Part shown: positions 2,355 to 63,267 of the stretch, piece after piece
How the letters are laid out: each line of letters starts with the position of its first letter
How positions within the stretch are numbered: the first letter of the stretch is position 1
Assembly (NCBI GenBank): GCA_964247055.1
Contig: OZ176058.1
Location: forward strand, 1,736,001-1,800,000
Length of the DNA: 64,000 bases
From: Paragordius varius
Taxonomy: Eukaryota; Animalia; Nematomorpha
Reading direction: 5' to 3'
Notes under the pieces: model-generated
The model's database searches: none
The model's input: only the letters and a program-made list of their open reading frames with translations
Told to the model about the DNA's origin: nothing
Position numbers and translations under genes: made by a program

Positions 2355-2413
<59 letters not shown>

Positions 2414-3556: not shown

Positions 3557-3559
3557 TAT

Positions 3560-39659: not shown

Positions 39660-39905
39660 TACCATTTACAATAATTCACCCTTGAACAATTCAAATTCAC
39701 GTGTTTTTTAAAATTAAAAATTATCCATATTTAAAATAAAAATTTTATTTTAAACTAAAATAATAAACTAAGCCATAAAGAAATATTTCATATTAATAAT
39801 GAGTTATATTAGTTCGAAATACACATAATTTATTTCTAGGGTGAATTTGAATTGCTAAAGGGTGAATTCTAATTGTTCAGGGGTGAATTTGAACTGAAAA
39901 TGGTA
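39660..39905. mobile_element. MITE family A copy
   Basis: TACCATTTAC...AAATGGTA. Confidence 0.8.
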
Positions 39906-39974
39906 TATTACTGTAATAAAAAAATTTTAACCTAAAATTTTTATACATTTCAATAACTAATAATTTATTTCAAA

Positions 39975-41052: not shown

Positions 41053-41186
41053 TTATTTGGGTAAAAAATCGCATAAAGAGACAAAACCACATTGGCCCAT
41101 ATTATTTCGTGACATTAGTTTAAGACATTTGGAAGCTTGACCAATAGCTATTTCTAAGGTACTTCGAGGGCGTTTTCCTTGTAATT
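41053..41186 (-). CDS. RanBPM: RanBP9/10 (RanBPM) C-terminal half, terminal exon
   Basis: ATTAG|AA acceptor; ELQGKRPRSTLEIAIGQASKCLKLMSRNNMGQCGFVSLCDFLPK* matches the RanBP9 end '[43 protein letters not shown]' (from memory). Confidence 0.85.
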
Positions 41187-41764
41187 CTAATATTGATGAC
41201 ATAATATATATGATAAAGTATAAATTTGGTTTTTGTTAATTATTTCATAAAAAGAATTTTGAAATATAAATTTAGTTAATTATTTCATAAAAAGATTTAA
41301 GAATTTAAGGATATCAAAGATGTTTTTTGAAATATAATTGAAATTTTTTTCGTTATTTATTTATTTCATAAAAATAATTTAAGCTTTAAGGATATCAAAG
41401 ATGTTTTTTGAACTACAAAAGAAAACTTAAAAGAGAAAATAAGAAAATCATAAGAGAACAAAACCTTAAAGATAAATATTAACTAAATATTTTTCCTAAG
41501 GGTAAAACATATTTTAAAACCTATCATCACCGTTGCAAAATAAGGCTTACAGATGTAAATTGGATATATTAACATTGCTAGAAAATTTTTAATTATTGCT
41601 AAATAGCATATGCAGTAAAGAGAATTATTATTGGCTAATAATAGTAAGTATAAAGTGAAAAAAATAACTATAAACCAATAATACTGCTTGTTTTATATGC
41701 TCTTTCATGGCTATAATTTAAAACATTCTATGTATACATATTCATACTGTAAAAACTTTATATA

Positions 41765-42131
41765 TACCATTTACAGTTCAAATTCACTCTTAATTTAAAT
41801 TCACCCTTAAACAATTCAAATTCACCCTTGAACAATTCAAATTCACCCTCGAACAATTCAAATTCACCCTAAAATAAATTATGTGTTTTTTAAGATTATA
41901 TATTACCTATAATTTTTATATTTATAAAAAAACAAATTTTGTATGTAATCAAAATAATACTGAAAAAAATAATAAACTTTGCCATAAAAATATATTTAAT
42001 TTTAATTATGAGTTATATTAGATACAAGTTTCATAATTTTGTAGGGTGAATTTGAATTGTTCGAGGGTAAATTTGAATTGTTTAAGGGTGAATTTGAATT
42101 GTTTTAGGGTGAATTTGAACTGTAAATGGTA
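41765..42131. mobile_element. MITE family A copy (in the last intron of the RanBPM C-terminal half)
   Basis: TACCATTTACAGTTC...GAACTGTAAATGGTA perfect termini and mirrored 21-bp arrays. Confidence 0.9.
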
Positions 42132-42313
42132 TATTACACAATATAAAGATTATAGATTTTACAGTTTATTCTTAAAAATTACTCCTTACTGTCGATCAAA
42201 TCCAAAAAATATAATATAAATCAAGGCAAAAAAAAGTAGAAATTTACCAAATAAAATAAAATATGTTTAATAAAAAAAATTTTATGCTAAAAAAACTAAA
42301 AATTAAATTTTAC

Positions 42314-42425
42314 CCAAAATAATGCTATTTAGTTGGAGAGCTAATGGTTCTCGATTAAGGGGATCTAAAATACCCTTAATGATAGATTCCCATGGATTTG
42401 AATAAGCTAAAACACTAAAGGCATC
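42314..42425 (-). CDS. RanBPM: RanBP9/10 (RanBPM) C-terminal half, CRA-domain exon
   Basis: AATAG|GAT acceptor; DAFSVLAYSNPWESIIKGILDPLNREPLALQLNSIIL matches the CRA motif [44 protein letters not shown] donor. Confidence 0.9.
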
Positions 42426-42804
42426 CTATTATGAAAATTATATATAAATATAAAAGTAATTTTATTTTTATTTATAAATGTGAATGAAAAAAATATATAT
42501 TATTATTCTTTAAAAAATGTTCTTTTTATTTTTATTAATATAATTAAAAATATTTTTATTAATTAAATAAATAGATATAGAAATATAGTATATAAGTAAT
42601 TGAAAAGATTGTGAAAATTTTAATTTATTTTTACATAAATTCAATTTAGTTTAACATTATATAGTTGCATTTATAACGATGAATATTCAACTAAGATATG
42701 CAAAAAAAACTTTCTTATTTAATTAAATTTCAAACATTATATTATATAATTTTATTAACAGAATAAAACAGTAAAACAAACTTAAAATATATAAAACTAA
42801 TATA

Positions 42805-43103
42805 CAGTAAAAACTAAAATTTCATTAAAACAAAACTTGAAAATATAAAGACGACAAATACTATTTTCAAAAGACAACCATACTTTTTAAAACCCCAATT
42901 TTTGCTATATAAAATATTTGATTACAATCGTAAACTACATAATTAATTGTGCTACCAACAATTTACATTGATATTTGATATTTTGCAATTTAAAACAAGC
43001 AGTTATATTTAAAATATTATAAGATTCAAAAAATATGGTTGCCTTTTAGAAAAAAATATTTGTCTATATATTATTACGTTCCGTATAATTTCAATTTTTT
43101 CTG
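42805..43103. mobile_element. MITE family B copy
   Basis: TA|CAGTAAAAA...TTTTTCTG|TA. Confidence 0.75.
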
Positions 43104-44279
43104 TATTAATAATAATATATTTTATTTTTTATTTATAGAAATAGGAATTTAGTAGTTAAGTAAGGAAACAAAAAAATATATAAAACAAATTTATTAAAAT
43201 AATTTGAATATTTTACAAAAAATATACTATAAACATCTCAATTTTTAAATTTTTAATTAAAGTAAAAAATGAAATTATACCACAAAACGTAAAAATATAC
43301 CATTTTAAATTTAAATTCACCCGTTAATTATTATTAATTCACCCTTGAACAATTCGAATTCACTCTTGAACAATTCTAATTCACCCTAAATTATGTGTTT
43401 TCGGGCTAATATAACTCATTATTTATTAGTAATATGGCATAGTATATTATTTTTTTCAGTATTATATCAATTTTATGCCAATTTCATTTTTTAAAAATAT
43501 AAAATAATATAAGTAGTTTTTAATCTTAAAAACACATCATTTATTTTTAGAATAAATTTGAATTTGAACTGTTCAAGAATTAATATGGATATGGTATATA
43601 TCAAACCAATTTATTAGTTATATATTGAATATTTTACAAGTAAAATATCTGAAACATTCCAATTTTACAGATTTTGAAATCAAAATATGGAAGGACAAAA
43701 ATATATAAAGACAAATTTTTTTTCTAAAACATAACTCCATACTTTTTAAATCTTGAATTTTTAAATATAACTTACATTATTTTATTAAACTACAAATTAT
43801 AATATAGGAATGTCAATTGGTAACACAATCAATTATATGTGCATTAGCAATTCAAATTCACCCTCGAACAATTTAAAATCACTAATAATAAATTATCAGG
43901 CTAATATAACTCATCTTTATTAAGAAATATATTCTTATAAAATAGTATATTTTCAGTAGTATATTAATTTTAAACTGAATATTTTTAAAAAAATAAAAAT
44001 ATAGGTAATTTTTAAATTTAAAAAACGCATAGTTAATTTTAGGGTGAATTTGAATTGTTCGAGGGTAAATTTTGTTAGTGAATTTGAACTGGATATGGTA
44101 TATTTTACGATTGTAAATAAATGAGTTTTATATGGAAATTTTAGATATTTAAAAAAAATGGTCTTTTACAAAAAAATATTTGTCTTTATATTTTAACGTT
44201 TTGTCCGTATAATTTCAATTTTTACTGGATATACTTAAAAAAAATATTATTTTTTATTTTAATAAAATAAATACGTATA

Positions 44280-45010
44280 AAAAATCTCTAAAAATGCTAT
44301 ATATTCTTAAAATAATTTTAATAAAAAAACTTTCAAAATGGTAAAATATTTCATCCTTAATTATTATAAAACTATAATATAATATAATATACATATTATA
44401 TAAAAACTCTAAAAAATGGTTAAATATATAATTTTGGAATATTATTAAAATTATAATATTTTAATATAATTATATTTATAAAATAAAAAAACTCTAAAAA
44501 ATGGTTAAATATATCATTCTTTAAATAAAATATTAAAAATAATAATTTGATATTACGTATAGAAAAAACTCTAAATGCTTAAATACATCATCTTTAAAAT
44601 AACTTAAGTAATTATAAAATTTAAATATCTAAAAATATATACGTATAGTAAAGAACTCTATAAATGGTTAAATACATCATCTTTAAAATAATTATAATAA
44701 TTATATAATTTAAATATCTTAAAATATATACTGTATGGAAAAAAAATTCTTAACAAGGATAAATATATTATTTTTAAAATAATTAATATCTTATAATAAA
44801 ACTTTATGGAAAAAAACTCTAAAACAACTTAAATTTTTTTTTAAAATAATTATTATAAAACTATATTATAATTATACAAGTTTATTATTAATAAAAACTC
44901 AAAAAAGGTTAAATATATCATTAAAATAATTATAATAAAACTATAATTTATATAATATATTTATAAAAAAATTCAAAAAAAGTCTAAAAACTTCTAAATA
45001 AAGTTTAAAA
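44280..45010. repeat. About 60-70-bp degenerate AT-rich intronic array
   Basis: Recurrent AAAAACTCTAAAAAATGGTTAAATATATCAT. Confidence 0.75.
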
Positions 45011-45121
45011 CTTCCAAATAATAATAAAATATAATTATACAAATTTATCATAAATAACTCAAAAAAGTCCAAATTTTAATTTTTATTAGAAATTTCAAAT
45101 AAAATTCAAAATCTTAAATAC

Positions 45122-45261
45122 TTGTAATTGCCTATCAATCTCATCAGCGGTATAGGGAATTATAAGGGTAGATTGTTTTAATTTTTGTCCTTTGTTTGCA
45201 AATTCACTCAGATTTTTATCGTTTATAGCCGGCGTTTTGATATTCGTGTTATTAGTTGAGC
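45122..45261 (-). CDS. RanBPM: RanBPM C-terminal half, exon preceding the CRA core exon
   Basis: AATAG|GC acceptor; STNNTNIKTPAINDKNLSEFANKGQKLKQSTLIIPYTADEIDRQLQ; CAA|GTATTT donor, phase 0 into DAFS. Confidence 0.7.
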
Positions 45262-46899
45262 CTATTTATAAAAGAATTAAAATAATTAAGAATTATTATA
45301 AAAATTTATAAATATATTTTTTCTGAATACTTGAATTAAATGTACTTTTAAAAAATAATTAATATAATTCAACATTTTTTATCGTTTTATAATTTCTATG
45401 TTAATATATTTATTTATATATATATATATATAAAGTAAACATTTCTATTTTCAGTTTTTTTAAAACAATTATTAATTTTTTGGAAAAAATAATTGGGAAT
45501 TTCGAAATTATCGTTTATAGCTGGCGTTTTGATATTACTGTTATTGGTTGAGCCTATTTAATAGAAATAAAATAATTAAGATTTATTAAAATTTATTTAT
45601 GAAAATATTTTTATTTTTTATTCCTCGAAATTTTATTAAAGCTAATTAATATTTTTTATCGTTTTATAATTTCTATTATAATATTTATATAAAAAATAAA
45701 CATTTTGATTTTCAATTTTTTGTTAATAACTGTATTTTTATAAACAACTCGTTAAAAAATAACTAATTTTTTTGCAAATTCACCAAATATTTATCTTTAA
45801 AACTTTATTGCTATATTGTTATAGGTTGAGCTTATATAATAGAAAATTCAGATTTATCTTATAAAATATTTTTATATTTTATTCCTCAATATTTTATTAA
45901 AGATAATTAATATTTTTTATTATTTTATAATTTCTATTTTAATATATATATATCATATCCATTTATAATTTGCTATTAAAAACTGTTTTTTATAAACAAC
46001 TTATTATTTTAGAAAAAATAACTAAATTTTTTTTGCAAATTCACCCAAATTTTTATCGTTTATAGCTGGCATTTTGTTTTTCGTGTTATTGGTTGAGCCT
46101 AATTAAATATCAAAATTAAATAATTAAGATATAAATATAATTTTATTTTTTCTTTATAAATTATTTCATAAAAATTACTTTTTGGGGAATTTAAAATTTT
46201 TAATAATTAACTGTTATTAATTCTTTTAATATTTAAAAAATAACCTCATTTTCAATAGTTGTGACTACTGTTTTTTTTATAAACAACTATTTATTAGTAA
46301 AAATAATTAATTTTTCTTACAAATTTATCAAAATTAATTGTTTAATATCGTGGTTTTACTATTAATGTTAATTAAAGAGCTTGTTTAATAAAAATAAAAT
46401 GAATAAAATATATTTTAAAAATCCCAATTTATTACATCTAGGTATTTGTATTTCCTTTTATAATATTTTATTTAATTATTTTTCAAGGATTTCACAATTT
46501 TTATCGTTTAATTAATAATTTTTTTATTTAAATAGCTAAAAAATAACCATTTTTAATACATGATTTTTTTAATATGGTAAAAATATAATTTTTTTTGCAA
46601 ATTCACCCAATATTTTATCGTTAAATAGACAGATATCGAGGTGAAAAAAAACTTAGAATTAAACCAAACCATGACTTTTAAAAGCTCATTTGAAAAGTTT
46701 TTTTTTGAAATTAAACTCAAGCTATTAATAATAAAAACTGCTTTTTTCTTTTGGCTTGTCAACATTTCAAGTTATATTATCGATGTTTTCTAAAACTATC
46801 AAATTTTTGAAAAACATATCGAGTTGGTGGTGAAACACACTTATAATTTAGAAAGGAATTATTAAATAAAGGTCATTCATTATATTTCCATTAAAACCA

Positions 46900-49700
46900 A
46901 TTTTAAAATTTTCTAAACCATCTACAATGAAAAAAAATTCAAATTCCAATGATTTTTTTTCAAATTTTTCATCGAATTTTTATTATCCTTATTTTCTACA
47001 ATGTTTTTTGCCAAATTAGAGTTTGTGTTTTGCTTTTTAAGTTTTTAAAAGATAAAAAACTTTTTAAACAACGGAATTTTCGAACAAATTATTTAATTAT
47101 GAATATTTAAATAATTTAAATTCATGTTTTTTTCAAATTTTTCATCGGAATTTTTATATTATCATTATTGATAAATGCCATCAAATCTTTGAGAGTTTAA
47201 GCTTAGCTCTTTAAGTTTTTTGAAAAAATATTTAAATAAAAATACACTTTAAACTTAAATTATTTAATAATTAAATATTTAACATAATTCAAACCGATAC
47301 TTTTTTCTAAGCTTTTTGATTTTTATTCTCATTTATTTTTTAACTGCTGATTGGCAAATTTTGTAAGTTTAAGTTTCGATCTTTAAGTTTTCAAAAGATC
47401 TTTGGAAAAAAAAATATTTAAACTATGAGTTCCCCAACAAATTATTTAATATATAAATAAATATTAACCATAATTTAAATGAATCCTTTTTTCGTTAGGC
47501 TTTTCATTTCATTTCATTTTATTATTATTTTTTATAAATGCCATCAAATTTTAGTTTTCAAAAGATGTTTGAAGAAAAAACTTTTTTAAACCATTAACCT
47601 AACTAATTATTAAATATTTAAAAAATATTTTCCATAATTTACACCAATATTTTCTTCTTAAAACTTTTCATTTCAAGTCTTATTATCATTATTTTCAAAG
47701 GCCATCAAATTTTTTAAAGTTTAAGTTTTGCTCTTTAACTTTTCAACAAAAGACATCATATATATTATTGTAAATTTTTATTCAAATACATTAAAACAAA
47801 TAAAGAACAATTATAAATATATATGTAAAATCTAACCATTACTTTTTATCAAATTTTTTAAAGTTTAAATTTCGATTTTTAAGTTTTTAAAAGATATTTG
47901 AGAAAAAAACTTTTTACATAAATTTCCTAACAAATTATTTAAAATTCAAGTATATAACATAATTTAAACAAATATTTTTCCTTTATGCTTTTCATTTGAA
48001 GTCTTCTTATTATTATTATCATTTTTTTCCTAAAGCCATCAAATTTTAGCGCTCTTTAAGTTTTCAAAAGATATATGAAATTTTTTTTACAACAAATAAA
48101 GAATATTTAAAAATATTATATATAAAATATCTAACCATAACTTTTTTCTTTAGGCTTTTTATTTAAAATCTTATTATTTCTAATTACATCATTATTTTCT
48201 AGTATGTTATATGCTTAATTTTTGTAAGTTAAAGTTTTAGATTTTGAAAAAAAAAACTCTTTAAACCATGAATTTCCTCACAAATTAAAGAACAAATTAA
48301 GATTAATTATAACTAACAAATGCTTTTTTCTTTAGAGACTTTTCATTTAAAGTTTTATTATTATCATATCATTATTTTCTAAAGCCATCAAATTTAGAAT
48401 TTTAAGTATTACTCTTAAAAGTTTTTTTATATTATCAAAACAAATTATCTAAAACTCTCAAAGTCATGAAATTAATTTCCATTAAAAACAAATTAAGAGT
48501 AATTAAAAATATATACAGTAAAAATTGAAATTATACGGCAGAATGTAATAATATAAAGAATATTTTTTCAAACTACAACCCCATACTTTTTAAAACATTA
48601 ATTTTTCTCATCTAAGCTATTTGTTACAATTGTAAAATATAGAATTGATTGTGGTTAGTTTTAATAACTCTTATTCAAATTTTGATATTATGAACAATGA
48701 GAGTTATACTTAAAAAAATTAAGAATTAAAAAGTATGGCGTTGTTTTTTAGAAAAAAATATTTGCCTCTATATTTTTACATTTTGTTCGTATACAGTTTT
48801 TACTGTAAAATCTAACCAATATTTTTATTAAAAGTTTTATTATCATCATTATTTTCTAAAGTCATCAAATTTTAGGTTCGCTTTTGGTTTTCAAAAGATA
48901 TTTGAAACAAAAAACTTTTTAAACCTTAAATTTCCCACAAATTAATCAATTATGGATTTATCATATTAAAACCAATAGTATATATAGTTTTTTAGGCTTT
49001 TCATTTAAAATTTTATTATTATTATCATTTTTTCCAAAGCACCATTAAATTTTGGGCTCAGCTTCTTAAGTTTTCAAAAGATAATTGAGAAAAAAACTTT
49101 AAAACACCTCAAACAATTTAATATATATATAACATAAAACAAATATTATTTCTTTTTCATTTGAAGTTCTGTTATTATTATTCTATAAAGTGTTTTAATT
49201 GCCTAATTTTTATAAGTAAGTTTTCAAAAGACATCAAATATTATTATTGTAAAAAAAATTATCTAATAAAACTTTCAAAGTCTCACATGAAATTTCCTTA
49301 AAAAAAAACAAATAAATATATTTCTTAACATAATTTAAACAATTACTTTTTTCTTTAGGCTGCTTTTCATTTGAAATTTTATAATCATTTAAAGTATTTT
49401 TATCATCATTATTTTCTAAAGCCATCAAATTTTTAAGAGTTTGAACTTCGTTCTTCAAGTATTCAAATTATTTCAAAAAAAAACCTTTTAAACTATAAAT
49501 TTCCCAAAAAAAATTAAAAAAAACTTTTTAAACAATAAATCCTTCCAACGAGACATTCAATATTTAACATATTAAAACCAATGGTTTTTTAGGCTTTTCA
49601 TTTAAAGTCTTATTATTAGTAATATCATCATTATTTTCTAGAGTCATCATTTTAAGCTTTTTAAGTTTTCAAAAGATACTTGCGAAAAAAAACTATTTTC
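46900..49700 (-). repeat. About a dozen degenerate tandem copies of the 49347-49452 exon with flanks
   Basis: Recurrent TTAGGCTTTTCATTT..TATCATTATTTTCTAAAGCCATCAAATTT..GTTTTCAAAAGAT. Interrupted by a family B MITE at 48516-48805. Confidence 0.8.
49347..49452 (-). CDS. RanBPM C-terminal half, most 5' exon found (acceptor uncertain)
   Basis: NEVQTLKNLMALENNDDKNTLNDYKISNEKQPKEK then A|GTAATT; A+GC completes Ser with the next exon. Needs an AAG acceptor (TTGAAG|) because an in-frame TAA lies 12-15 nt upstream. NEVQTL resembles RanBP9 'RELQAM'. Confidence 0.5.
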
Positions 49701-49740
49701 TATTAATCTATATATTTATAAAAATGGAAAATGCTGGCTT

Positions 49741-50604
49741 TGTGATCTGGTACAGGAAAACCGGTAGACCCAATCAAATCCAAATATCGAAAAAATATAA
49801 TCATTAATGAATGGCCCGACAATAGCTTCGCCCTTTTTTAGAAATAGGGCCCCAGTTCGGGCCCACCCCGTGTGAAAAATGGGTTTTTTTTTTGAAAACA
49901 CAAGTCCACAAAAATCGTGTCTTTGAGACAATTTTCCGGAGAACGTGTTGGACCATTCAATTTTAAATACGATTTTTGTTTACATATTTTTGATCGCGCT
50001 GAACATAGTCGAGTCACTTTTTTGATTTAGGCCCTCTTTTTACCCCCTCCCCCCGTAAAATGCCATTTTTTTCAAAAAACAAAGTCCACAAAAATAATTT
50101 TCTAAATCGATTTTTCGCCCTAGGTATGAGACCGTAAAAATTCAATAAAGATTCCACGTATTCCCTGTTAAAAGGCAAAAATTTTAGTCCACCGTTTATT
50201 TGATGATAGCTGCTGGGTAAGGAGCTACCCGCTAAAAACTAATTTTTCATATAACTTTGTGATCTGGTACAGGAAAACCGGTAGACCCATTCAAATCCAA
50301 ACTTCGAAAAAATATAATCATTAATGAATGCCCCGACAATAGCTTCGCCATTTTTTTGAATTAGGCCCCCAGTTCGGGCCCACCCCGTGTGAAAAATGGG
50401 TTTTTTTTGAAAATGACAAGTCCACAAAAATCGTGTCTTTGAGACAATTTTCCGGAGAACGTGTTGGACCATTCAATTTCAAATATGATTTTTGTTTACT
50501 TATTTTCGATTGCGCCGAACATAGCCGAGCCACTTTTTTGATATAGGCCCTCTTTTTACCCCCTACCCCCGTAAAATGCCACTGTTTTTCAAAAAAAGTC
50601 CACA
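49741..50604. repeat. GC-elevated about 350-bp direct repeat pair (49741-50090, 50258-50604) with a 167-bp spacer; class unknown
   Basis: Both copies run TGTGATCTGGTACAGGAAAACCGG...AAGTCCACA. Confidence 0.9.
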
Positions 50605-51001
50605 AAATTTATTTTTATATAATTGTAAAAACTTAAAAATTTCTCTAATATTGATAAATGAATTAGAGTTACGTTTTCCGGAAAATTGCTCGTGTAAATT
50701 AATATTTTTTTATTAAACCATATCTTTTACCGAATAAGTATTAGTCGCATACCCAATAAAATTGCACAAAATTACATTACATAGCAATATTTAATTATGG
50801 ATAAAGGAGCTAATAAATTTTATATAATTATAATAATGGTTGAAAATGTATTATATATTTAATTATTTTTTATTAATAAATATATATTTATAAATTATAG
50901 AGGTCGCATATATCTAATAATTCAAAATAATTAAATACTTATTTATTAATAAATTTTTCACTATTAATAGTATGTATTTTTATTGTTTTTACATGATAGT
51001 A

Positions 51002-51330
51002 TACCATTTACAATTCAAATTCACCCTTAAACATTTTATAAATTCACCCTTAAACAAATCAAATTCACCCTTAAAACAATTTAAATTCACCCTCGAACAA
51101 TATAAATCCACCCTAAAATAAATTATGTGTTTTTTACATTTAAAATTATCTTTATTATTTAAATTTTAAAAATATGAAATTCTGTTTAAAATTAATATAA
51201 TGGTGATAAAATAACAAACAATGCCATAAGAATATATTTCTTATTAATGATGAGTTATAATAGTTGAAAAATCATAATGTATTAGGGTGAATTCGAATTG
51301 TTCAAGGGTAAATTTGAATTCTAAATGATA
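51002..51330. mobile_element. MITE family A copy
   Basis: TACCATTTAC...CTAAATGATA with 21-bp units. Confidence 0.8.
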
Positions 51331-51559
51331 TATATATATACAATAAAGAGAAATATTATTGACCTAAAGTTATAATTTTGCCTTTATTCATCAATAAAAA
51401 GCTCTCTTTACTGTATATGTTAGCCGGTTAATATTACATAAAATATAGCAAGAAAGTTATTTATTCAAGCAAACACTTTACCTATTCTATATATAGAAAT
51501 ACATTGCCAACTTTTTATTAAACATTGCCAGATATTTCTAAATGAAAATTATTTTAAAT

Positions 51560-52000
51560 TAACATCAATGTTACCAAGGTTTAACTGGATGATAAATGAT
51601 ATTTCAGTTTTAATTTTATATTAAATAAATTTGTCAATAGCAAACTTTATGCTGACGATGACCAAAGTAACATAATTTAAAATTGGTTTTTTTTTGAAAA
51701 ACATTTAAATATAAATGGTATAAGCCTTATTATATAAAAATGTAATATTTGGTTTAAACTACTTTTTGACCAATTTATTTAAATTTGTAATTATAAGAAA
51801 AATGATTTAAAATTTTAAAGTCATCTTTAAAATCAAAAATATGATGTGATTGTTTCAGACAATTATATAGAAAAAGTGTTATATAAAAGTGTTTTTATAT
51901 CGATTCCACCCAAAATATCTCAAATATCACGCCACCAAAATTTTGCTATAAAAAGCTTTTTTAGAAAGAGATCTAGATGAGAACTACTAAAATTTTTCTT
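51560..52000 (+). mobile_element. Highly decayed non-LTR retrotransposon reverse transcriptase fragment (CR1/L2-like)
   Basis: Ordered remnants: TS..(P)QG (about 51563-51580), SKLYADD (51638-51658), KC, (G)VIVSD, IEKV. Frameshifted, no long ORF. Confidence 0.5.
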
Positions 52001-55000
52001 TAATAAAGCATTTATTCACTTTATAATGCAATTTATATTTAAGATAATATGAATTTATTATGTTTCGATAATTATGAAATATATATAAAAAATATTTAGT
52101 AGCAAATTTGCATGATACAAAATGTTTTTATAATGTAAAATTTTAAAATCATCTCAAAATTTTTTGCCCATTTTTTTCATATTTTTTTAAGAACGCTAAT
52201 ACATTGGGCAAATAATTGCATCTTATAATTAAATAACTTAAGACAGCTTATAAATTAAATTCCAGAAATTTTTTAATATTTTTTTTAATATCAGCAGTTT
52301 GCCTCCATTATGTTTTGGACTTATCCGACGTTGATAGTAAAGAAGTTATAAAACTGTAAAAATTATAATGTCGTTTAATGTAATATAGTAAAAGAGAGTT
52401 TGAAAATTGAATTATAACCAAAAAACTTTGTAAACATTATGTTTAATACTTTAAGTCGGGAAAGAAATACCCCAAAATGTCACGGCGTACAAAAAATGGA
52501 AAATATACTGAAGCGTTTCATTGTTTTTTCACAGTTTAAACCACGCTACCAAATGCCATAAAACTCTTAAATTTTAAATCTACAGAAAAAATAAAATTAT
52601 ATAGATAAAATATAAAACAAAGACAAAATATTTTTTTCAAAAGACAACCTTATACTTTTATAAACCTTACTTTATCCTATAAATAAAATTGCAATCTTAA
52701 ATCCAATTGACATTCCTATATACTTTGTAGTCTAGAAATTATGAGTTATATATAAAATAATCAAGATAAAAAAAGTATAGTTGTTTTTTTAAAAAAATAT
52801 TTGTCCTTATATTTGAAGTTTTGTCCGTATATTTTTAATTTTTACTGTAAAAGTATAACGTTTTTTTGAGCTAAAATTTTTTGATATTTCAATCTAACAC
52901 TTAATTCATATTGCGGTATCTCATTTTGCGTTTACTATCAATAATCTAGCCTATTTTATGGGGGTTAAAAGTCGAAACTTTTATAATTCAAAAAAAAATT
53001 TAAAATCTATTAGATTTGTTTTTATCTTTAATATAGAATTTTAGTACATTTTTGAAATTAAAGCATTTTAGCATCGTATTCAATCCGATACCAGTGAGGG
53101 GGGTATAAAAATATTTTGATGAAATATACATTGCGTTTGAAATCGGGTGGTATATAAATAATCTAATGCATATATTCTGATAAGAAAATGTATCATAATT
53201 ATCATGGTACTTTTGGTTTGTTTTAAAAGCAAAGTAACAATGCTTTAACAATTCAGGTAACTACCCCCTACATACAATGGCAAATTTGCGCACATTTTAT
53301 CAAATAAAATTTGATGAAAGCTTAAGGCTTTCGAAAAAAAATATCACAAACATATTTTATAACTACAGATAAATAGCAAAATAATATTACTTAATATTTA
53401 ATTTTTAAATGTGGGTTTCGAAAGTCCCATAATTCATAGTTTTATTTAAAACGCAAAGCCGAGATTGTGCGAAGCTAAATTTTTCGATCAATATAAATTT
53501 TTTTTTGCAAAAATAATAATATTTTTACTAAAATTTTGTCGAAACGTACATAGAACTTTATGAGAAAAACGGTATAAAAACGCTTTTAGGAACTAAAACT
53601 TTTTGATGTTGAACATTTATATTACAGTTTAAGTTATTTACAGTTATACGACTTCTAAATAAGAAAGCTCCAAAACACGATCGCAACGTTGATATGTTAA
53701 TTTAAACACATCAAGATTTTCCTCGTAAAATGTAGCCTGAAAATTTTTTGTTAATTATATGTTTAACTAATTATTATAGAACATTTTTTGCCTGTCGCAT
53801 TAGCGATTAAAAAAATCCATGAAAAAAATGGCGACACAAAAGTTGGAGATGAGGATGTTTTTTTTTCAATTTTTCATTTTTTAAAATTTTTTTAATGCAA
53901 AAGTCAAAAAGTATTTCTGAAATTGCTTGAACCTTAAGTACTTTTTATTTATTTTTTTAAATGATTCTGCGATATAAACTGCCCCACAATGTAATGGAGT
54001 TTAAAATATAAGTTCCTTTTCAACTTATGTTAAACATAATTTTTCACAAGGTTTCAGCCAAATTTGAAGCATATCAACATGTAAATTAATCTGAGGTAAT
54101 AAACATGCTCAGCATCATCGAACTGTATGTAAAAAGTTATCTTAAAAACCAAAGTCTATAGTATGCAATAAAATTTTGATATAATTTAATTTTTATAAAT
54201 AAGTGTGCATTTTTAAAAAATATATTTAGTAGGTATCAAAAATTAGTATTTTTTATCGTACAGTCTGAAAATTTTACATCTATTATAATAGCTAGTCTAT
54301 TTTAGTGCAAAAAAATTAGGGTTTGGAGCACATTTATATAATAAAATTTTATCTTAAAAATGGAAGAATTGATGTGGCAGATATGTTAATAAGACTTGAT
54401 TTGTGTGCAGTATGTAATCAAAACCAAAAAAATAATTCGTAATATTTACATCTTTTGTTAATAAATTTGCAGGTTTATTCTCCAAATTGTATTCTGGATA
54501 TTAAAATTATAAAATATAGGGTTATATTACGTTATATATTTTATCATTGTTTTGTCAGCCAATTTTATGAACATACATTTATCCAGATTGACAATATCTT
54601 GATACGACAAAGTATATTATTTTTAATTATTTTTGAAAATATTATAAATCCTTGTTTTATTAAATAGTAGCTTTTTGAAATTTAATGGAGTTTTTACTCC
54701 AAGCACTTAGTTTATCTATTTCAATCACTGTTCTGCATTAATTTACTGTCTTATATATTTAATATCATTTTTGTAAATTATACATATCTAATATATTGCA
54801 AAATATAATGGCAAACGCTCTATTTAACCAGAGACATACTTTAAATTTTAAAATATTACATTTGATTTTTTGTGTTATAAAATTTTATCCCAAAGATTTT
54901 TCAAATAGTATTTTAAAATCCTTAGTCAGTCATTTTAAATTTATAGATAATATATTATTTTTTTTCAATAAAACAATTTTTTTTTAATATACATGAATTT

Positions 55001-55255
55001 AAACTATTATACATTCTTTTATTCAATGGAATCGCGACTTTTTCATTTAATATTGGCAGAGAGCATTTACAGTAAAGAGCAGTTTTATTGGCTTAAAGGA
55101 AGCATAATGGTACATTATTACATATTTTTTAGGCATAAGTTAAGGATATTTACGCTAAATATAAATCAAGGCTGCCTTACACAAATGGCACCTGCGGGTT
55201 ATCTCTATAAAAAAATTTTAATAACTTTTTAAATTCATATTAATTAGAAGAAAAA

Positions 55256-55571
55256 ATGACTCTGTTAATTGGTTCGTCCACAAATTCTGAGCTCCGAGCA
55301 AATCGAAACAACAGTAACAATAGCAATAACCCAGATAATACAACAACCATGTTAGATGATGAAGGATGGCAAGATGGAGGTAATAATGATGAAACTCACC
55401 AAATGGCATCAAATTCTTTTGCTTGTGCTAATCAATTCCCAGCAGACCTAATTCCACTGCTGTATCCCAATGTGAATGAAAGTGAAACACCCCTACCCCG
55501 GGCCTGGAGTTCAAAGGATAAATTTAACTTTCTCGGTCTATCGCAGGATAGATTAACCGTTAATTATAAAG
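55256..55571 (+). CDS. RanBPM: RanBP9/10 (RanBPM) N-terminal half, coding exon 1
   Basis: ATG at 55256; ...[37 protein letters not shown] is the typical RanBP9 pre-SPRY segment; G|GTAATA donor. Confidence 0.9.
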
Positions 55572-56763
55572 GTAATATGTTGTGTGTTAGTAAGTATGTA
55601 TTATGTTTAAAATAATCGGATATTGAACAAAGACAACCTTTTTTCAAGCCTAAGCAACATTTTTTTATCCGCCACATTTTTTTAAGCAAACGCGACATTT
55701 TTCATTCAAACGCAACATTTTTTCATCCAAATGCAACTTTTTTTAAGCAAAAACTACTAAAAAAAATGTTACTTTAGACTGAAAAGTGGTTTGTATGTTT
55801 TTTGAAGAAATTTTAGATTTTAGAATTTTTGGGCTTTTTTGATAATTTTATTTTTGATAATTTAAGAAGTTTTTTGGTATTTTTAGGTTATTGAAATAGT
55901 GTTTATTTTTTGTAAATTCTTAGATTTTTAATAATTATATGTGAATTTCATAGGGTGGTATTTTTAATAATTTTTTGAGAAAATATAATTTTTTCTTCAA
56001 TAAAATTTTTGGGATTTTTTCGTTAAATTACTATGTGGAGCTCATTAAGTAAAATTTAATTTTCTCGGGATGTCGTAGGAAAGATTACCTTCAATTATCA
56101 AAATATATTAAATGTTTGAGAATGTTTTCGAACTTTTTAAACTGTTTTTTCTGAAATAATGGTTTTTTTGGCATTTTTGTTGATAATTGCTTCGTTCTCT
56201 GGAAGTTTCTTGAAGTTTTAAAAAATTCGTATTAATAACTTATTATGAAATAATTATTAAATTATCAAGGTTTGATGTAAATATAAGTAAGTTTTTTAAA
56301 ATATCAATCTTTTTTATATCATTATTTAGTCAATGTATTCTGTCATATATAACAGACTGAGTATAAGTTAAAAAACATAACATAAATATATTATAACCTT
56401 TGATTTATGAATATGGGGGATCAAATGAAAAATTTAAAAAAATTTTAATGTCGAAATATATTGGATGTAAGCGCATGCGCACAATCGTATCGTCTGCTTG
56501 AAACAGTTCAATAAATAATTTATTGTCCGTTAATCTAATTTCCATTTACTCATACTTTGCTATTTATATAAAAATCAATACATACTTCAGCCTAACTAGA
56601 AAAACTATATTATAATTTCGTTTCGAAAAGCCATCTTTACTAAACTAAGTATGTTTCTCTTTGTTCTTTAAACCAGTCCAAAACTGGCTTCGCAGACCGC
56701 ATTTTCGACTCAAAGAATCCGGCGAGCGGCATTTCAAATATATATATGTGGGATTCATAAATA

Positions 56764-56972
56764 CAATATGAGTAAATATATATTGCTAGAAAGTTATTAA
56801 TTATTGCCGCCAAATAGCATATGCAGCAAAGAGAATAATTATTGGCTAATGATAGTAATAAAAATTGAAATAAATAACTATAAGCCAATAATAATCTACT
56901 GCCTGCCCTTTGTTGATTCTGCTGTTTGGCTATAATATAACTTTCTAGCAATGTATACTCTTATTCATACTG
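56764..56972. mobile_element. MITE family C copy in RanBPM intron 1
   Basis: TA|CAATATGAGTAAATATATATTGCTAGAAAG...CTTTCTAGCAATGTATACTCTTATTCATACTG. Confidence 0.8.
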
Positions 56973-57522
56973 TTTTAATATACGTGTGCAGCCCGCAAAC
57001 ATTTAAAAATCGATAATTTTCAAAAATATGCTTATAAATGCGGTTGAAATATAATAATTTCCCCATATGAATGTTCAATTATATATTTCGAACGCTGCCC
57101 GCGAAGCCATTTGTGTTAAACACTCGTGTATTATATCATGTGGTCGAAAGATCATGAATAACTTTTGAAATATAAGCACGACAACCAATTTTTTACTCTG
57201 CATATATAAACCAAAATTAACGTAATATTGACAATTTTTTTTAATAAGGATGCAGGTAACGTACACTTTTTGGATTACACTTCACAAAATAGGAAATAGA
57301 GATGTATATATATAACTTAACCAATTATGTTTTTCAATTTGTAGTTAAATAATTTATATATGGAAAATTTAGGTGGTTGTCTTTAAAAAAATATTTAGGC
57401 GTATATGATATCAATTTAAACGTCGTATAATTTAATTTTTACTGTGGAAAATACTAAAAAGGTATTTTAAATTTGACACTTGTTTTTTGATAAGTTTTAC
57501 TTATATTTTATCTTTTATTTAG

Positions 57523-57687
57523 GTATTGGAAAAACGCATAAAGATGCAGCTAGTATACGGACACCCTACCCTATACCCGCCACGTGTGGACTTTACTATT
57601 ACGAGGTGCGAATCGTTAGTAAAGGTCGCGATGGATATATGGGGATTGGATTCTCTTCCCAAGCCGTTAGTATGAATCGATTACCAG
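57523..57687 (+). CDS. RanBPM: RanBPM SPRY exon 2
   Basis: TTTAG|GT acceptor; [55 protein letters not shown]; CCAG|GTTTTT donor. Confidence 0.92.
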
Positions 57688-59800
57688 GTTTTTTAGGAAT
57701 TTGGAAGATTTTAAGAAATTTTGTTTTAAAGTTTTAGAAATTTTTTAGTTTTTTAATTTTAAGAGTTTTTAAAGTTTTCAAAGTCTTATAAGGTTTAAAA
57801 AATGGAAAAAAATGATAAGTTTAATCAAGAGTTTTGGGGTTTGAAAGTTAAAATTAGTTTGAGATTTTTGACATTTTAGTTTTGAAGTTTGAAAAATTGA
57901 AAAAAAAGTTATTGGTTTCTCTTCCCAAGCCGTTAGTATGAATCGGTTACCAGGTTTTTGCGATTTGGAAGATTTTGAGATGAAAGTTTAATAAAAAGTT
58001 TTAGTAGAAAAGTTTGAAAGTTTTAGTTTTAGATTTAGAGTTTTAGAGGTTAGGTTTTCAAAAGTAAGAGTCTTATAAGGTTTAAAAATTTTCTTTTTTT
58101 AGGTTTTATGGGTTTTCTTTTAAAGCTTTTAATATGAATAGATTACCATTTTTTTGAGATTTTAAGAATTTGAAAAAGTTTGTTTTTAAAGTTTAATTAA
58201 AAAAGTTGATGTTTAAAAAGTTTTAGTTTGAGATTTAAGTTTAAAAGTTTTAGTTTAAGATATATGGGAATTGATTTCTCTTCCCAAGCCGTTAGTATGA
58301 ATCGGTTACCAGGTTTTTGAATTTTGAATTTTAAGATTTTTAAGATTATGAGAGAAAGTTTTAGTTTTAAAGTTTTTTAGTTTTAAGAGTTTTTAAAGTT
58401 TTAAAATAAAAAAAGTTTAATTTGAGATTTTAGAAAATTTAAAAATATGGTTTCTCTTCCCAAGCCGTTAGTATGAATCGGTTACCAGGTTTTAGGAATT
58501 TGGAAGATTTTGAGATGAAAGTTTAATAAAAAGTTTTAGCAGAAAAGTTTGAAAGTTTTGAGATTTAAGTTGTATTAAAAGTTTGTAAAGTAAGATTGAT
58601 GAATTCGAAATTTTTATAATTTTAGGGAAAGTTTTAGTGGAAAAAGTTTAATTGACAGTTTTTAAAAGTTTTTAAAAGTTTTTACACGTCTTAAATGTCT
58701 TATAAGGTTTAAAAAATGGAAAAGTTTTTACTTTTTTGAGTTTAAAATAAGTTTTTTTTAAATACTTTTATATCCTCTCTTCCCATTATGAATCAGCTTC
58801 CAATGAACTTTTTTAGCTTTTTGAATTTTTTTAAAGGTTTATTTAAAGTTTAAAATAAAAATTTTAAAGTTTAGGTTTTTAAACAAAATTTAGATAAGTT
58901 TTTTTTTAAATTTTTATAAGTTCTCTTCCCAAGCCGTTAGTATGAATCGGTTACCAGGTTTTTGAATTTTGAATTTTAAGATTTTTAAGATTATGAGAGA
59001 AAGTTTTAGTTTTAAGAGTTTTTAAAGTTTTAGTTTTAAGTTTAATAGTTAAATTAAGAGTTTTTAATGTTTGAGAAATTAAAAAAAAGTTTTTAAGTTA
59101 TATTTAAGTTCAAAAGTTTTAAACAGTTTATTATTTTAAGAAGGATTTTTAGTTGTAAAGTTTAGGTTTTAAAAGTCATAAGAATCTTATAAGGTTTTAA
59201 TAAGTTTTTATTCTTTAAGTTTTTTAGTTTAAAAAAAAAGTTTTTTTTTAAATTTTTATGGGTTATATTCCCATGAATTTTGTAAGGTTTAAAGTTTTTA
59301 AAATAAAAGTTTTAAAGTAGTTTAGGTTTTTTACAAAAAGTTTTAAAATTCATTAAATTTCTATGACATCTCTTCCCAAGCCGTTAGTATGAATCGATTA
59401 CCAGGTTTTTGAATTTGAAAGATTTTTGGAATTTTAGGCAAATTTTTAGAAAATTTTAGTGAAAAATTTTATTTTTAAAAGTTTTTAAGTATAAGAAGAA
59501 AAGTTTTAAATTTTTATGGGGTTTACTTTCAAGCTTTTTAATATGAATTGATTACCAGGTTTTTTTTGATTTTACAAAATTTTAGTGATTTTTTTTTGAG
59601 ATTTTTGACATTTAAGTTTAGAAAGTTTTAGTTTTAAAGTTTTATTAAATGTTTTTAAAGTTTATAATATAAAAAAAATGAAAAAGTTTTTATGTTTAAG
59701 AAAAGTTTTTTTTTTAATTTTTATGGATTTTCTTCTCAAGCCGTTAGTATGAATTGGTTACCAGGTTTTTTTAAGATTTTAGAAATTGTTTTTTATTTTG
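57688..59800 (+). repeat. Tandem array of the RanBPM exon 2 3' end plus donor
   Basis: TTCTCTTCCCAAGCCGTTAGTATGAATCGGTTACCAG|GTTTT at about 57917, 58275, 58451, 58922, 59389, 59730, plus 3-4 decayed copies. Confidence 0.95.
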
Positions 59801-61768
59801 AGAAAATTTCAGTGGCAAAAAAACCTATTTTTGACAAAAAAGAGTTAACAACGAATTTATTTTATTTGAAACTTTCAAAATCTTTTAAAACATTTTCTAA
59901 AAAACAATTTTTAGATTAAACACAGTTACGGTTACCATGGCGACACTCTTTCTTTGTGTTTCAGTATAATGATAAAAAGCTTTTTTTGACAAAACAAGAG
60001 TTAACGAAAGTATTTCATTTGAAACTTTCAAAATCTTTTAAAACATTTTCTAAAAAACAATTTTTTAAACACAGCTACGGTTACCATGGCGACACTCTGT
60101 GTTTCTGTTTCAGTATAATGATAAAAAGCTTTTTTTGACAAAAATGAGTTATTGAATGGAAAAAAATGAAATTTAAAACTTTCAAAACATTTAATCTTTT
60201 AAAACTTTTCCAAAAAACAATTTTTAGGTTTAAACACAGTTACGGTTACCATGGCAACGACGGAGGGTCCTTTTGATGTTAAACAAAGATAAAACCTATT
60301 TTTAAAATGAAATATCGAATAAAACAAAATGAAATTTAAAACTAAAACATTAAAATCATTTAAAACATTTTCTAAAAAACAGTTTTTAGGTTTAAACACA
60401 GTTACGGTTACTATGGCCATACTCTGTGTTTCTGTTTCAGTATAATGATTAAAAGCTTTTTTTGACAAAAATGAGTTATTGAATGGAAAAAAATGAAATT
60501 TAAAACTTTTAAAACATTTAATCTTTTAAAACTTTTCCAAAAAAGCCAATTTTTAGGTTTAACACAGTTACGATTACCATGGCAACGACGGAGGGTCCTT
60601 TCAATATAATGGTTAAAACCTATTTTTTTAGAAAAAATGAAATATCGAATAAAACAAAATGAAATTTAAATAAAATCATTTGAAACTTTTTTTCAAAAAA
60701 TATTTAAATAATATAGTACGGTTACCATGGCGACACTCTGTCTTTGTGTTTCAGTATAGTGATAAAAACCTGTTTTTTGAAAAATTGAAATATCGAATTG
60801 AACAAAATGGAATTTAAAATTTTCAAAACTTCAAAATCTTTTAAAACATTTTCTAAAAAACAATTTTTCAAACACAGCTACGGTTACCATGGCGACACTC
60901 TGTGTTTCTATTTCAGTATAATGACAAAAACCAGTTTTTTGAAAAAATGAAACATCGAATTGAACAAAATGAAATTTAAAGCTATAAAGACTTTTGCAAC
61001 TTTTTTTTCTAAAAACAACATTTTTCTAGGTTGGGATAAACACAGTTACGGTTACCATGGCGACACTCTGTGTTTCTGTTTTAGTATAATGTTAAAACCT
61101 CTTTTTGAAAAAAAGCTTTTTTTAAAACTTTCAAAATCTTTTAAAATCTTTGAAACTCTCTAAAACAACTTTTTCAGGTTGGGATAAACATAGTTACGGT
61201 TACCATGGCGACACTCTGTGTATAATGTTAAAAACCTGTTTTTGAAAAAATGAAATTTTCAAATTAAAGTTATGAAAATCATTTAAAACTTTTTGAAAAC
61301 ACTTTTCTAGGTTGGGATAAACATAGTTACGGTTACCATGGCGACGACGGAGGGTTCTAATATGACGACCTATTTTTTTTGTTAAAAACTACTTTCTTAC
61401 AAAAAAGGAATTTTGCAATATTACCTACCATAATTAAAATTTCAAAACTTAAAATCTTTTAAAACTTTTTGCAAAAACAACTTTTCTAGGTTGGGATAAA
61501 CATAGTTACGGTTACCATGGCGACACTCTGTCTTACCTATTTGAAAAAATGAAATATTGTATTGAACAAAATGAAATATCGAATTGAACAAAATGAAATT
61601 ATAAAACTTTAAAAAGACTTTTAAAACTTTTTGAAACTTTTTGTAGGTTGGGATAAACATAGTTACGGTTACCATGGCGACACTCTGTCTAATAAAATAT
61701 CGAATTGAACAAAATGAAATTTAAAACTTTAAAAAGACTTTTAAAACTTTTTGAAAACACTTTTCTAG
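59800..61768 (+). repeat. Tandem array of the RanBPM exon 3 acceptor plus 5' end
   Basis: Twelve copies of (TTCTAG|GTTGGGAT)AAACA(C/T)AGTTACGGTTACCATGGCGAC before the real exon. Confidence 0.95.
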
Positions 61769-61936
61769 GTTGGGATAAACATAGTTACGGTTACCATGGC
61801 GACGACGGGCGTTCCTTCTGTTGTTCTGGGACGGGTCAGCCCTATGGTCCAACTTTTACCACGGGGGATATCATTGGGTGTGGAATTAATACAGCTGAAA
61901 ACTATTGTTTTTACACGAAGAATGGCGTGGATTTGG
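61769..61936 (+). CDS. RanBPM: RanBPM SPRY exon 3 (gene continues beyond the window)
   Basis: TTCTAG|GT acceptor; [56 protein letters not shown]; G|GTTAGT donor. Confidence 0.92.

Positions 61937-63221: not shown

Positions 63222-63267
<46 letters not shown>

What the first reader, a model, noticed from the sequence alone, without database searches (positions are those of the whole stretch)
41053..61936. RanBPM split into two halves on opposite strands, head-to-head
Seen: SPRY-coding exons 1-3 run rightward on + from 55256, while four phase-compatible exons coding the RanBP9/10 C-terminus (CRA core DAFSVLAYSNPW and terminal ..IGQASKCL..) run leftward on - from 49452 to a stop at 41053. I found no SPRY, LisH or CTLH exons on - between 49.7 and 55.2 kb or inside the + introns, so the minus part has no visible 5' half. 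Its splice sites and frame look intact. Established: RanBP9/10 is a single SPRY-LisH-CTLH-CRA polypeptide, and C. elegans eri-6/7 and Drosophila mod(mdg4) build one mRNA by trans-splicing opposite-strand pre-mRNAs. Inference: this is (a) a natural split gene transcribed divergently and trans-spliced, (b) a real inversion carrying the 5' exons, (c) a CRA-only partial duplicate (in-frame ATG GCT in the 49347-49452 exon gives about 154 aa), or (d) a contig misjoin.
Basis: partly seen in the sequence, partly recalled or inferred. Interest (0 to 1): 0.92.

Follow-up and report, generated by a model that had tools for sequence, protein, structure and literature searches.

The report
RanBP9/10 gene split by an inversion
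The first three and the last four coding exons of one conserved scaffold-protein gene (RanBP9/10) point away from each other across a transposon-filled 5.8 kb gap, which looks like one junction of an inversion, but I could not tell whether the animal really carries it or how a full-length protein would still be made.

Summary
On the + strand the window carries RanBP9/10 coding exons 1-3 (55256-61936). On the - strand it carries the last exons, from 49452 down to the stop at 41053. A profile of 29 orthologues matches positions 9-176 on + and 515-593 on -. Positions 177-514 (end of SPRY, LisH, CTLH, start of CRA) match on neither strand. Copies of the exon 3 donor continue to the window's end, so the + gene runs on past 64 kb.

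The closest relative available, the nematomorph Gordionus, has one collinear 24 kb gene with two of its 3' introns at the same protein positions as here. The flank of the first - exon is single copy in two individuals. An RNA-like run covers that exon and exon 1 at similar depth, and covers the unique spacer hardly at all.

Best reading (0.62): these are the two ends of one single-copy gene, separated by an inversion junction in the repeat cluster at 49.7-51.35 kb. I could not decide between a young or heterozygous inversion, an assembly error, trans-splicing (about 0.17) and an old partial duplicate (about 0.17). The sequence beyond 64 kb and the RNA reads at the 49452 acceptor could not be reached.

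Other notes from this scan describe the exon-copy arrays in this genome. None describes this split.

The parts
55256..55571 (+). E1: first coding exon of the RanBP9/10 orthologue (ATG at 55256; ends ...NYK-G in phase 1; donor GT at 55572). RNA-like coverage begins at about 55.0 kb.
   Evidence: profile positions 9-66, E 2.8e-19; X11 depth 30.9 and 44.5 in 54940-55339
57523..57687 (+). E2: start of the SPRY domain ([10 protein letters not shown]...NRLPG)
   Evidence: profile positions 61-121, E 5e-35; 79% identical to Gordionus
57688..61768 (+). Intron 2, made largely of copies of the E2 end plus donor (57911-59775), followed by copies of the acceptor plus E3 start (59918-61684)
61769..61936 (+). 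E3: SPRY core ([13 protein letters not shown]...NGVDLG); ends in phase 1
   Evidence: E 5.6e-36; Pfam SPRY 44.7 bits
61937..64000 (+). Start of intron 3. It holds at least five scored copies of the E3 end plus donor (62063-63346), plus weaker copies as far as 63959. The + gene therefore continues beyond the window.
49347..49452 (-). C1: first visible minus-strand exon (NEVQTLKNLMALENND...). It is the one open copy in a tandem array of about 170-bp units. The acceptor is AAG at 49453. An alternative in-frame donor would end the exon at 49341.
   Evidence: RNA-like depth; no significant homology
46700..49711 (-). Array of C1-unit copies on both sides of C1. On the upstream side it stops at the edge of repeat R1.
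45122..45261 (-). C2: low-complexity linker exon ending ...EIDRQLQ in phase 0. Copies of its acceptor side lie upstream at 45508-46622.
   Evidence: no significant homology
42314..42425 (-). C3: CRA core (DAFSVLAYSNPW...NSIIL). The intron positions on both sides match those in Gordionus.
   Evidence: E 1e-11
41053..41186 (-). C4: last coding exon (...IGQASKCLKLMSRNNMGQCGF...PK, stop TAA at 41055-41053)
   Evidence: E 3.7e-11
49716..50610 (.). R1: two tandem units of a 516-bp repeat. Its depth is about 10,000 times the single-copy depth. Candidate breakpoint repeat.
50990..51360 (.). R2: a MITE-like element built on 21-bp repeats, with many copies across the window
51354..54940 (.). Mostly unique spacer at single-copy depth, broken by short repeats near 52.6-52.9 and 54.0-54.3 kb. 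It has almost no RNA-like coverage outside those repeats and no exon-copy arrays. Probably the original 5' flank of E1.

Best explanation
These are the two ends of one single-copy RanBP9/10 (RanBPM) orthologue. In this sequence they are separated by one junction of an inversion. The junction lies in the repeat cluster at 49.7-51.35 kb (R1 plus a MITE).

The inverted block would run from upstream of exon 1 to the intron before C1. That leaves exons 1-3 on the + strand, followed off-window by the missing middle third, and leaves the last four exons on the - strand pointing away.

SHOWN:
- the exon content of each strand;
- the absence of the middle third from the window;
- the + gene continuing past 64 kb;
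- a collinear gene in the nearest available relative;
- single-copy depth next to C1;
- RNA-like coverage of both C1 and E1.

INFERRED: the inversion itself, because its second junction is outside the window.

HOW A FULL-LENGTH PROTEIN IS MADE, my ranking:
1. About 0.38. The inverted order is absent from the functional chromosome copy. It is either a young or heterozygous structural variant (about 0.20) or an error inside a contig (about 0.18). The mRNA is then spliced normally in cis.
2. About 0.17. The inversion is fixed, and the two divergent pre-mRNAs are joined by trans-splicing at the C1 acceptor.
3. About 0.07. The inversion is fixed, and the gene is expressed as two separate polypeptides or is dying.
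For: - The ortholog profile matches positions 9-176 on + and 515-593 on -, and nothing for 177-514 on either strand. tblastn with 19 orthologues gives the same picture.
- Copies of the E3 donor fill the sequence out to 63959, so intron 3 leaves the window.
- E3 ends in phase 1 and C1 starts in phase 0, so the missing middle exons are needed for an open frame.
- Gordionus RanBP9-like is one collinear 24 kb gene. Its introns before DAFS and after ...AIL lie at the same protein positions as C2|C3 and C3|C4.
- The X1 contig 49403-49728 (C1 to the R1 edge) has depth 331.8, like every other unique spacer contig (293-355). X2, from a second individual, has the same junction. So there is no near-identical second copy.
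- In the RNA-like run X11 the depth is 45.5 in the C1 bin and 44.5 in the E1 bin. It is 0-5 through most of the unique spacer and 16 just upstream of the C1 acceptor, where the DNA is about 10-fold repeated.
- The C1-unit array stops at the R1 edge and does not resume after it. The spacer beyond has no exon-copy arrays and looks like 5' flank rather than intron.
- The window contains no N.
Against: - The second junction and the middle exons were never seen, so 'inversion' is a model fitted to one junction.
- No RNA contig or read joining the halves was listed, and none showing the sequence spliced onto C1.
- The short-read contigs break at every repeat, so continuity across R1 and R2 is not independently shown.
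- Reads were laid at 90% likeness, so transcripts of a diverged second copy could have contributed to the C1 depth.
- C1 and C2 lack homology support.
- The C1 acceptor (ttgaag) is weaker than the other acceptors of the gene, which are ttag or atag.
Confidence: 0.62

Rival explanations
1. Trans-spliced split gene (a sub-case of a real, fixed inversion). The + pre-mRNA (exons 1-3 plus the middle exons) and the - pre-mRNA (C1-C4) are transcribed divergently. The last middle-exon donor is joined to the C1 acceptor in trans. This restores one SPRY-LisH-CTLH-CRA mRNA, as in C. elegans eri-6/7.
For: - Both halves are intact, single copy and covered at similar depth in the RNA-like run. RNA depth drops just upstream of the C1 acceptor.
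- C1 starts inside the conserved first CRA helix (consensus ...LLEFGRELQAL against C1's NEVQTL), so C1-C4 alone would lack part of the domain.
- The junction is rich in transposons, as in eri-6/7, where Polinton-induced inversion is repaired by trans-splicing (PMC11414722).
- There is no gap in the window.
Against: - No joined transcript was seen.
- The donor-side intron is outside the window, so pairing repeats cannot be looked for.
- The MITE in the spacer has no copy in the + introns inside the window.
- The C1 acceptor is weak.
- The mechanism is rare.
Confidence: 0.17
2. Assembly error. The animal's gene is collinear, and a block was inverted inside a contig by a false join in the repeats at 49.7-51.35 kb.
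For: - It explains everything else with no special biology: single copy, intact frames, equal RNA depth, and a C1 that looks like an internal exon.
- The short-read contigs of X1, X2 and X5 all break at R1 (about 10,000-fold depth), at the MITE and at three other small repeats. The join is therefore not independently verified.
Against: - There is no N anywhere in 64 kb of very repeat-rich sequence, which points to a long-read contig.
- The largest repeat in the spacer is about 1 kb, well below long-read length.
- The junctions from unique sequence into the repeat edges (49403-49728 and 50732-51025) are present in two individuals.
Confidence: 0.18
3. Old partial inverted duplicate. The + gene is complete beyond 64 kb with its own CRA exons. 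The minus C1-C4 block is a diverged extra copy, either a decaying fragment or a CRA-only gene of 154-156 aa that starts at the ATG inside C1.
For: - Local duplication is rampant in this genome.
- An in-frame ATG GCT exists in C1.
- Laying reads at 90% likeness could have let transcripts of the true copy cover this one.
Against: - The C1 flank is single copy, and its 326-nt contig is unbroken. Any other copy must therefore be roughly 8-10% or more diverged (my estimate from the contig's continuity). Yet all four exons keep open frames and AG/GT borders.
- C3 and C4 are 70% and 62% identical to Gordionus, much as E1 is at 71%.
- A fragment without a promoter would not be expected to match E1's RNA depth.
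Confidence: 0.17
4. Gene fission. The inversion is real and fixed, and the two parts are translated separately: SPRY-LisH-CTLH from the + strand, and a 154-156 aa CRA tail from a new promoter near R1. They then associate without a covalent link.
For: - The ATG in C1 is the first in-frame ATG after an in-frame stop at 49470-49468.
- RNA-like depth is present at C1.
- From my own knowledge of CTLH-complex structures, not tested here: the C-terminal CRA helices pack against the LisH motif, so the two pieces could in principle meet.
Against: - The cut falls inside the first CRA helix rather than in the long disordered linker.
- RNA depth just upstream of C1 (16.1 at 49515) is no more than expected from background times the roughly 10-fold DNA copy number there. 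It is 0 at 49626 and 49651.
Confidence: 0.07
5. Nested arrangement. A complete minus-strand gene has its 5' and middle exons to the right of the window, and the + exons 1-3 are a partial inverted duplicate lying in one of its introns.
For: The middle exons are to the right of the window in any case.
Against: - RNA-like coverage begins sharply about 250 bp upstream of the E1 ATG, as expected for a real first exon.
- The E1 words are all present in X1 (share 1.00).
- E1-E3 are as well conserved as any orthologue.
- E3 donor copies fill the downstream sequence, as they do for active exons here.
Confidence: 0.03

Closest known systems
RanBP9/RanBP10 (RanBPM; yeast Gid1/Vid30), scaffold subunit of the CTLH/GID E3 ubiquitin ligase. 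Compared here with PDB 7NSC chain A and 9SOC chain A, and with Gordionus sp. XP_065316830.1.
   Same: - Exons 1-3 encode the conserved N-terminal motif and the first two thirds of the SPRY domain.
- C3 and C4 encode the CRA C-terminus, matching human RanBP9 residues 650-728.
- Intron positions around C3 are shared with Gordionus.
   Different: In Gordionus, as seen here, and as far as I know in other annotated animals, all domains are encoded collinearly on one strand. Here the 5' and 3' parts diverge, and the LisH and CTLH exons are not in the window.
C. elegans eri-6/7
   Same: The two parts of one ancestral gene lie next to each other on opposite strands after a transposon-associated inversion. 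The gene is collinear in relatives or other strains (PMC11414722).
   Different: - For eri-6/7 the joined mRNA and the pairing direct repeats have been demonstrated.
- Here no joined RNA was seen, and the donor-side intron is outside the window.
- In eri-6/7 it is the upstream part (eri-6) that was inverted. Here which block moved is undefined.
Drosophila mod(mdg4) and lola
   Same: 3' exons encoded on the opposite strand are joined to common 5' exons by trans-splicing.
   Different: Those loci use many alternative 3' modules to make isoforms. Here there is a single 3' module that is needed to complete one conserved domain.
Inversion misassemblies and heterozygous inversions in long-read genome assemblies
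   Same: They give the same picture: a conserved single-copy gene whose parts face away from each other at a repeat, with no other anomaly.
   Different: Scaffolding-type inversions are normally bounded by N gaps. There are none in this window.

Membership tests
RanBP9/10 (RanBPM) orthologue | N-terminal conserved motif plus SPRY domain | tested here: met
   E1-E3 match profile positions 9-176 (E 3e-19 to 6e-36). E3 passes Pfam SPRY at 44.7 bits against a cut-off of 26.3. Only the first two thirds or so of the SPRY domain are in the window.
RanBP9/10 (RanBPM) orthologue | LisH and CTLH motifs after the SPRY domain | tested here: inconclusive
   Neither is present on either strand of the 64 kb. 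They are expected beyond the right end, which could not be read.
RanBP9/10 (RanBPM) orthologue | CRA C-terminus (DAFSxLAYxxPW ... GQxxxCLxLM ... GxCxF) | tested here: met
   C3 and C4 match RanBP9 650-728 and RanBP10 516-594, and profile positions 515-593.
RanBP9/10 (RanBPM) orthologue | All domains in one polypeptide made from one mRNA | not testable with these tools
   No transcript contig spanning the parts could be obtained.
Trans-spliced inversion-split gene (eri-6/7 type) | Two parts of one ancestral gene on opposite strands, with relatives collinear | tested here: met
Trans-spliced inversion-split gene (eri-6/7 type) | The arrangement is real in the animal's DNA | tested here: inconclusive
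   All unique spacer segments and the unique-to-repeat edges are present in two individuals. However, the contigs break at each repeat, and no long piece spans the spacer.
Trans-spliced inversion-split gene (eri-6/7 type) | No intact collinear copy elsewhere in the genome | tested here: inconclusive
   The C1 flank is single copy at 31-mer level. A diverged copy is not excluded, because the rest of the genome was not available.
Trans-spliced inversion-split gene (eri-6/7 type) | A mature mRNA joining exons from the two strands | not tested
   The single read-laying run listed no X11 piece or loose end at C1 or E1. Only binned depth is available.
Trans-spliced inversion-split gene (eri-6/7 type) | Repeats that let the two pre-mRNAs pair near the splice sites | not testable with these tools
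   The donor-side intron lies beyond 64 kb. Within the window, the spacer MITE has no copy in the + introns.

The most novel reading that the evidence does not exclude
A conserved, single-copy animal gene (RanBP9/10) was cut by a transposon-associated inversion in a nematomorph-like lineage and is kept functional by trans-splicing of two divergently transcribed pre-mRNAs. This would be a second natural eri-6/7-type case, here in a core E3-ligase scaffold gene of a little-studied phylum.
Probability: 0.17. Interest if true: 0.85.

Novelty: new member of a known kind. Interest (0 to 1): 0.5.

Why it matters
Natural cases where an inversion cuts a conserved gene and trans-splicing repairs it are very few. 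A second one would show that the eri-6/7 route is not a nematode oddity. It would also offer a system for asking how two pre-mRNAs find each other.

If the split is instead an assembly or haplotype artefact, the finding flags a structural error in a chromosome-scale assembly of a poorly sampled phylum. That error would produce two truncated gene models.

Either way the question can be settled cheaply, with the neighbouring sequence and the RNA run that already exists.

Tried and rejected
1. FETCHING THE LOCUS BEYOND 64 KB THROUGH AN ANNOTATED OR TRANSCRIPT-DERIVED PROTEIN OF THE SAME SPECIES.
- The three word-index searches covered lengths of 120-1410 aa, and the profile-free search was added. 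None returned a protein more than 82% identical to the window.
- Exact look-ups of two window ORFs found nothing.

2. SYNTENY. A tblastx comparison of the 10 kb flanks of the Gordionus gene against the window gave no hit. Neighbours therefore cannot say which block moved.

3. MIDDLE EXONS OR THEIR COPIES IN THE SPACER.
- tblastn with word size 2, and hmmsearch with all filters off, found nothing for profile positions 177-514.
- A search for copies of the presumed end of the upstream exon plus a donor found only chance-level matches.

4. HOMOLOGY SUPPORT FOR C1 AND C2. There is none. The codons just upstream of the C1 acceptor read FEYLK in frame, after an in-frame stop. This resembles the conserved LEFGR/LEYGR. 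However, a second frame gives an equally good short match (ILEE.R), so I do not count it.

5. RNA GENES IN THE SPACER. No Rfam family and no tRNA were found.

6. LARGE INVERTED REPEATS AROUND THE JUNCTION INSIDE THE WINDOW. Only MITE-sized pairs were found.

7. RNA RUNS CARRYING THE SAME SPECIES LABEL (X6-X10). They hold none of the sampled words, so they were not used.

Full report
THE SEQUENCE. The window is about 20% G+C, has no N, and is a eukaryotic region rich in introns and repeats.

CHECK OF THE PLUS-STRAND EXONS.
- I translated all six frames. I then compared the window with 18 full-length RanBP9/10 orthologues, with the closest relative found, and with a 594-position profile built from 29 orthologues with all filters off.
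- On the + strand, E1 is 55256-55571, E2 is 57523-57687 and E3 is 61769-61936. Together they match profile positions 9-176, with E-values from 2.8e-19 to 5.6e-36.
- E3 alone passes Pfam SPRY.

CHECK OF THE MINUS-STRAND EXONS.
- C3 (42425-42314) and C4 (41186-41053, stop TAA at 41055-41053) match profile positions 515-593, with E 1e-11 and 3.7e-11.
- They also match solved human RanBP9 residues 650-728 and RanBP10 residues 516-594.
- Splice borders and phases were read from the DNA. All are AG/GT and fit in frame.
They are open and fit in phase, but have no significant homology.
- They correspond to a low-complexity stretch that is also long and unconserved in the relative.

WHAT IS MISSING.
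- Profile positions 177-514 cover the end of SPRY, LisH, CTLH, the linker and the start of CRA. They give only noise (E above 5) anywhere in the 64 kb, on either strand.
- E3 ends in phase 1 and C1 begins in phase 0, so the two visible parts cannot simply be joined. The middle exons are required.
- The sequence after E3 is filled with copies of the E3 end plus donor, out to 63959. In this genome such copies occupy the 5' part of introns.
- So intron 3 leaves the window, and the + gene continues to the right.

THE RELATIVE.
- The best-matching protein is RanBP9-like of Gordionus sp. m RMFG-2023, a horsehair worm (XP_065316830.1, 806 aa).
- It is 71-82% identical to E1-E3, and 70% and 62% identical to C3 and C4. 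Other animals reach at most about 59% for C3 and 36% for C4.
- Its gene is collinear on one strand over 24 kb.
- The introns before DAFS and after ...AIL lie at the same protein positions as C2|C3 and C3|C4.
- The split arrangement is therefore derived, if it is real. The flanks of the Gordionus gene share nothing with the window.

THE SPACER.
- C1 is the one open copy in a tandem array of about 170-bp units (exon plus short flanks). The array runs from about 46.7 kb to 49711.
- At 49716 the array abuts R1, which consists of two units of a 516-bp repeat. The array does not resume after R1.
- Next come about 370 bp of low-copy sequence, a MITE (50990-51360) and about 3.6 kb of mostly unique DNA without exon-copy arrays. 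E1 follows.
- No Rfam family and no tRNA lie there.
- I read this as follows. A short remnant of the intron upstream of C1 meets the original 5' flank of E1 somewhere in the repeat cluster at 49.7-51.35 kb.
- One inversion, running from upstream of E1 to the intron before C1, reproduces exactly this picture.

PUBLIC READS.
- Runs X1 and X2 come from two samples of the same coded organism. They are deep DNA runs in which unique contigs have word depth of about 330 (range 180-440).
- Every unique spacer segment is present in both runs. That includes the contig from inside C1 to the R1 edge (X1 49403-49728, depth 331.8, no differences; X2 49486-49728).
- That depth equals the depth of the other unique contigs (293-355). 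There is therefore no near-identical second copy of the C1 flank.
- The contigs are short and stop at each repeat. R1 has depth of 2-5 million, about 10,000-fold. Continuity across R1 and the MITE is therefore not independently shown.
- Run X11 has 24 Mb of contigs and comes from the same sample as X2. It behaves like RNA.
- X11 depth is 45.5 in 49340-49539 (C1), and 30.9 and 44.5 in 54940-55339 (5'UTR and E1).
- Through most of the unique spacer X11 depth is 0-5.
- It is 16.1 at 49515, where the DNA is about 10-fold repeated, and 0 at 49626 and 49651.
- After allowing for background times copy number, C1 is covered at least as deeply as E1. The coverage falls just upstream of the C1 acceptor.
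- The table did not list any X11 piece or loose end at C1 or E1, so I have no joined contig.
- Reads were laid at 90% likeness. Transcripts of a diverged paralogue could therefore have contributed.

WEIGHING THE READINGS.
- Recent duplicate: excluded by the single-copy depth.
- Old duplicate: would have to keep four open, spliceable exons and ortholog-level conservation, which is possible but not favoured (0.17).
- Nested minus-strand gene with the + exons as the duplicate: fits poorly with the sharp RNA start upstream of E1 (0.03).
- That leaves one single-copy gene with an inversion junction (0.62).
- Within that reading, a scaffolding error is unlikely without gaps. A false join inside a long-read contig across repeats of 1 kb or less is also unlikely, though not excluded (0.18).
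- A young or heterozygous inversion would leave both halves intact, and the other chromosome copy would supply the mRNA (0.20).
- A fixed inversion needs either trans-splicing (0.17) or two separate products or decay (0.07).
- Separate products are disfavoured because C1 begins inside the conserved first CRA helix (consensus LLEFGRELQAL against C1's NEVQTL).
- The precedent for repair by trans-splicing is C. elegans eri-6/7, where Polinton transposons induced the inversion and supplied the pairing repeats (PMC11414722).
- I could not test for pairing repeats, because the donor-side intron is outside the window.

WHAT COULD NOT BE DONE.
- No protein of this species is in the searchable collections. 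The sequence beyond 64 kb could therefore not be fetched.
- The decisive checks are simple and are listed under next steps.

SCORES. The exciting reading has a probability of roughly one in six. I score interest at 0.5.

Noticed in passing
window 57688-64000, 45262-49711: Introns here are largely built from tandem copies of the neighbouring exon edges with their splice sites:
- E2-end plus donor copies at 57911-59775;
- acceptor plus E3-start copies at 59918-61684;
- E3-end plus donor copies at 62060-63959;
- whole C1-unit copies at 46700-49711;
- C2 acceptor-side copies at 45508-46622.
C3, C4 and the Gordionus gene show none. Earlier notes of this scan report the same thing genome-wide.
   Followed up: partly
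window 49716-50610: Two tandem units of a 516-bp, relatively G+C-rich repeat. Its word depth in the DNA runs is about 10,000 times single copy, and it is also present in the RNA-like run. It occurs only once in this 64 kb. This copy differs from the family majority at several positions.
   Followed up: partly
window 50990-51360 and about 20 other places (for example 1200-3570, 25480-26030, 30800-31140, 39040-39910, 41760-42140, 43300-44070): A MITE-like element of about 340 bp, built on 21-bp repeats (AAATTCACCCTTAAACAATTC). It is scattered through introns and intergenic DNA.
   Followed up: no
window 9277-9471 and 12606-12812 (+): Two similar open segments of 65-69 aa (LGNK[IV]DVKPFSFMEK...LVEEYV.LKQKLAIL). 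They lie 3.3 kb apart, each followed by the same conserved antisense-open stretch. This is a local duplication of an exon or a small gene. Pfam gives nothing significant.
   Followed up: no
window 14879-21294 (-): A minus-strand gene with an LDL-receptor class A exon (17100-17267, Pfam E 1e-8), a transmembrane-like exon (14879-15067) and a 118-aa open segment (20941-21294). No Pfam family was found for the last two.
   Followed up: no
runs X6-X10 and X5: - Five RNA runs filed under the same species label hold none of the sampled words of exon 1 or of the 8.5 kb stretch.
- A run filed under another organism (X5) holds parts of the spacer at 3-6x. Some of those parts are identical and some are about 6% different.
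- This suggests mislabelled or cryptic species, or mixed samples, among the public runs.
   Followed up: no
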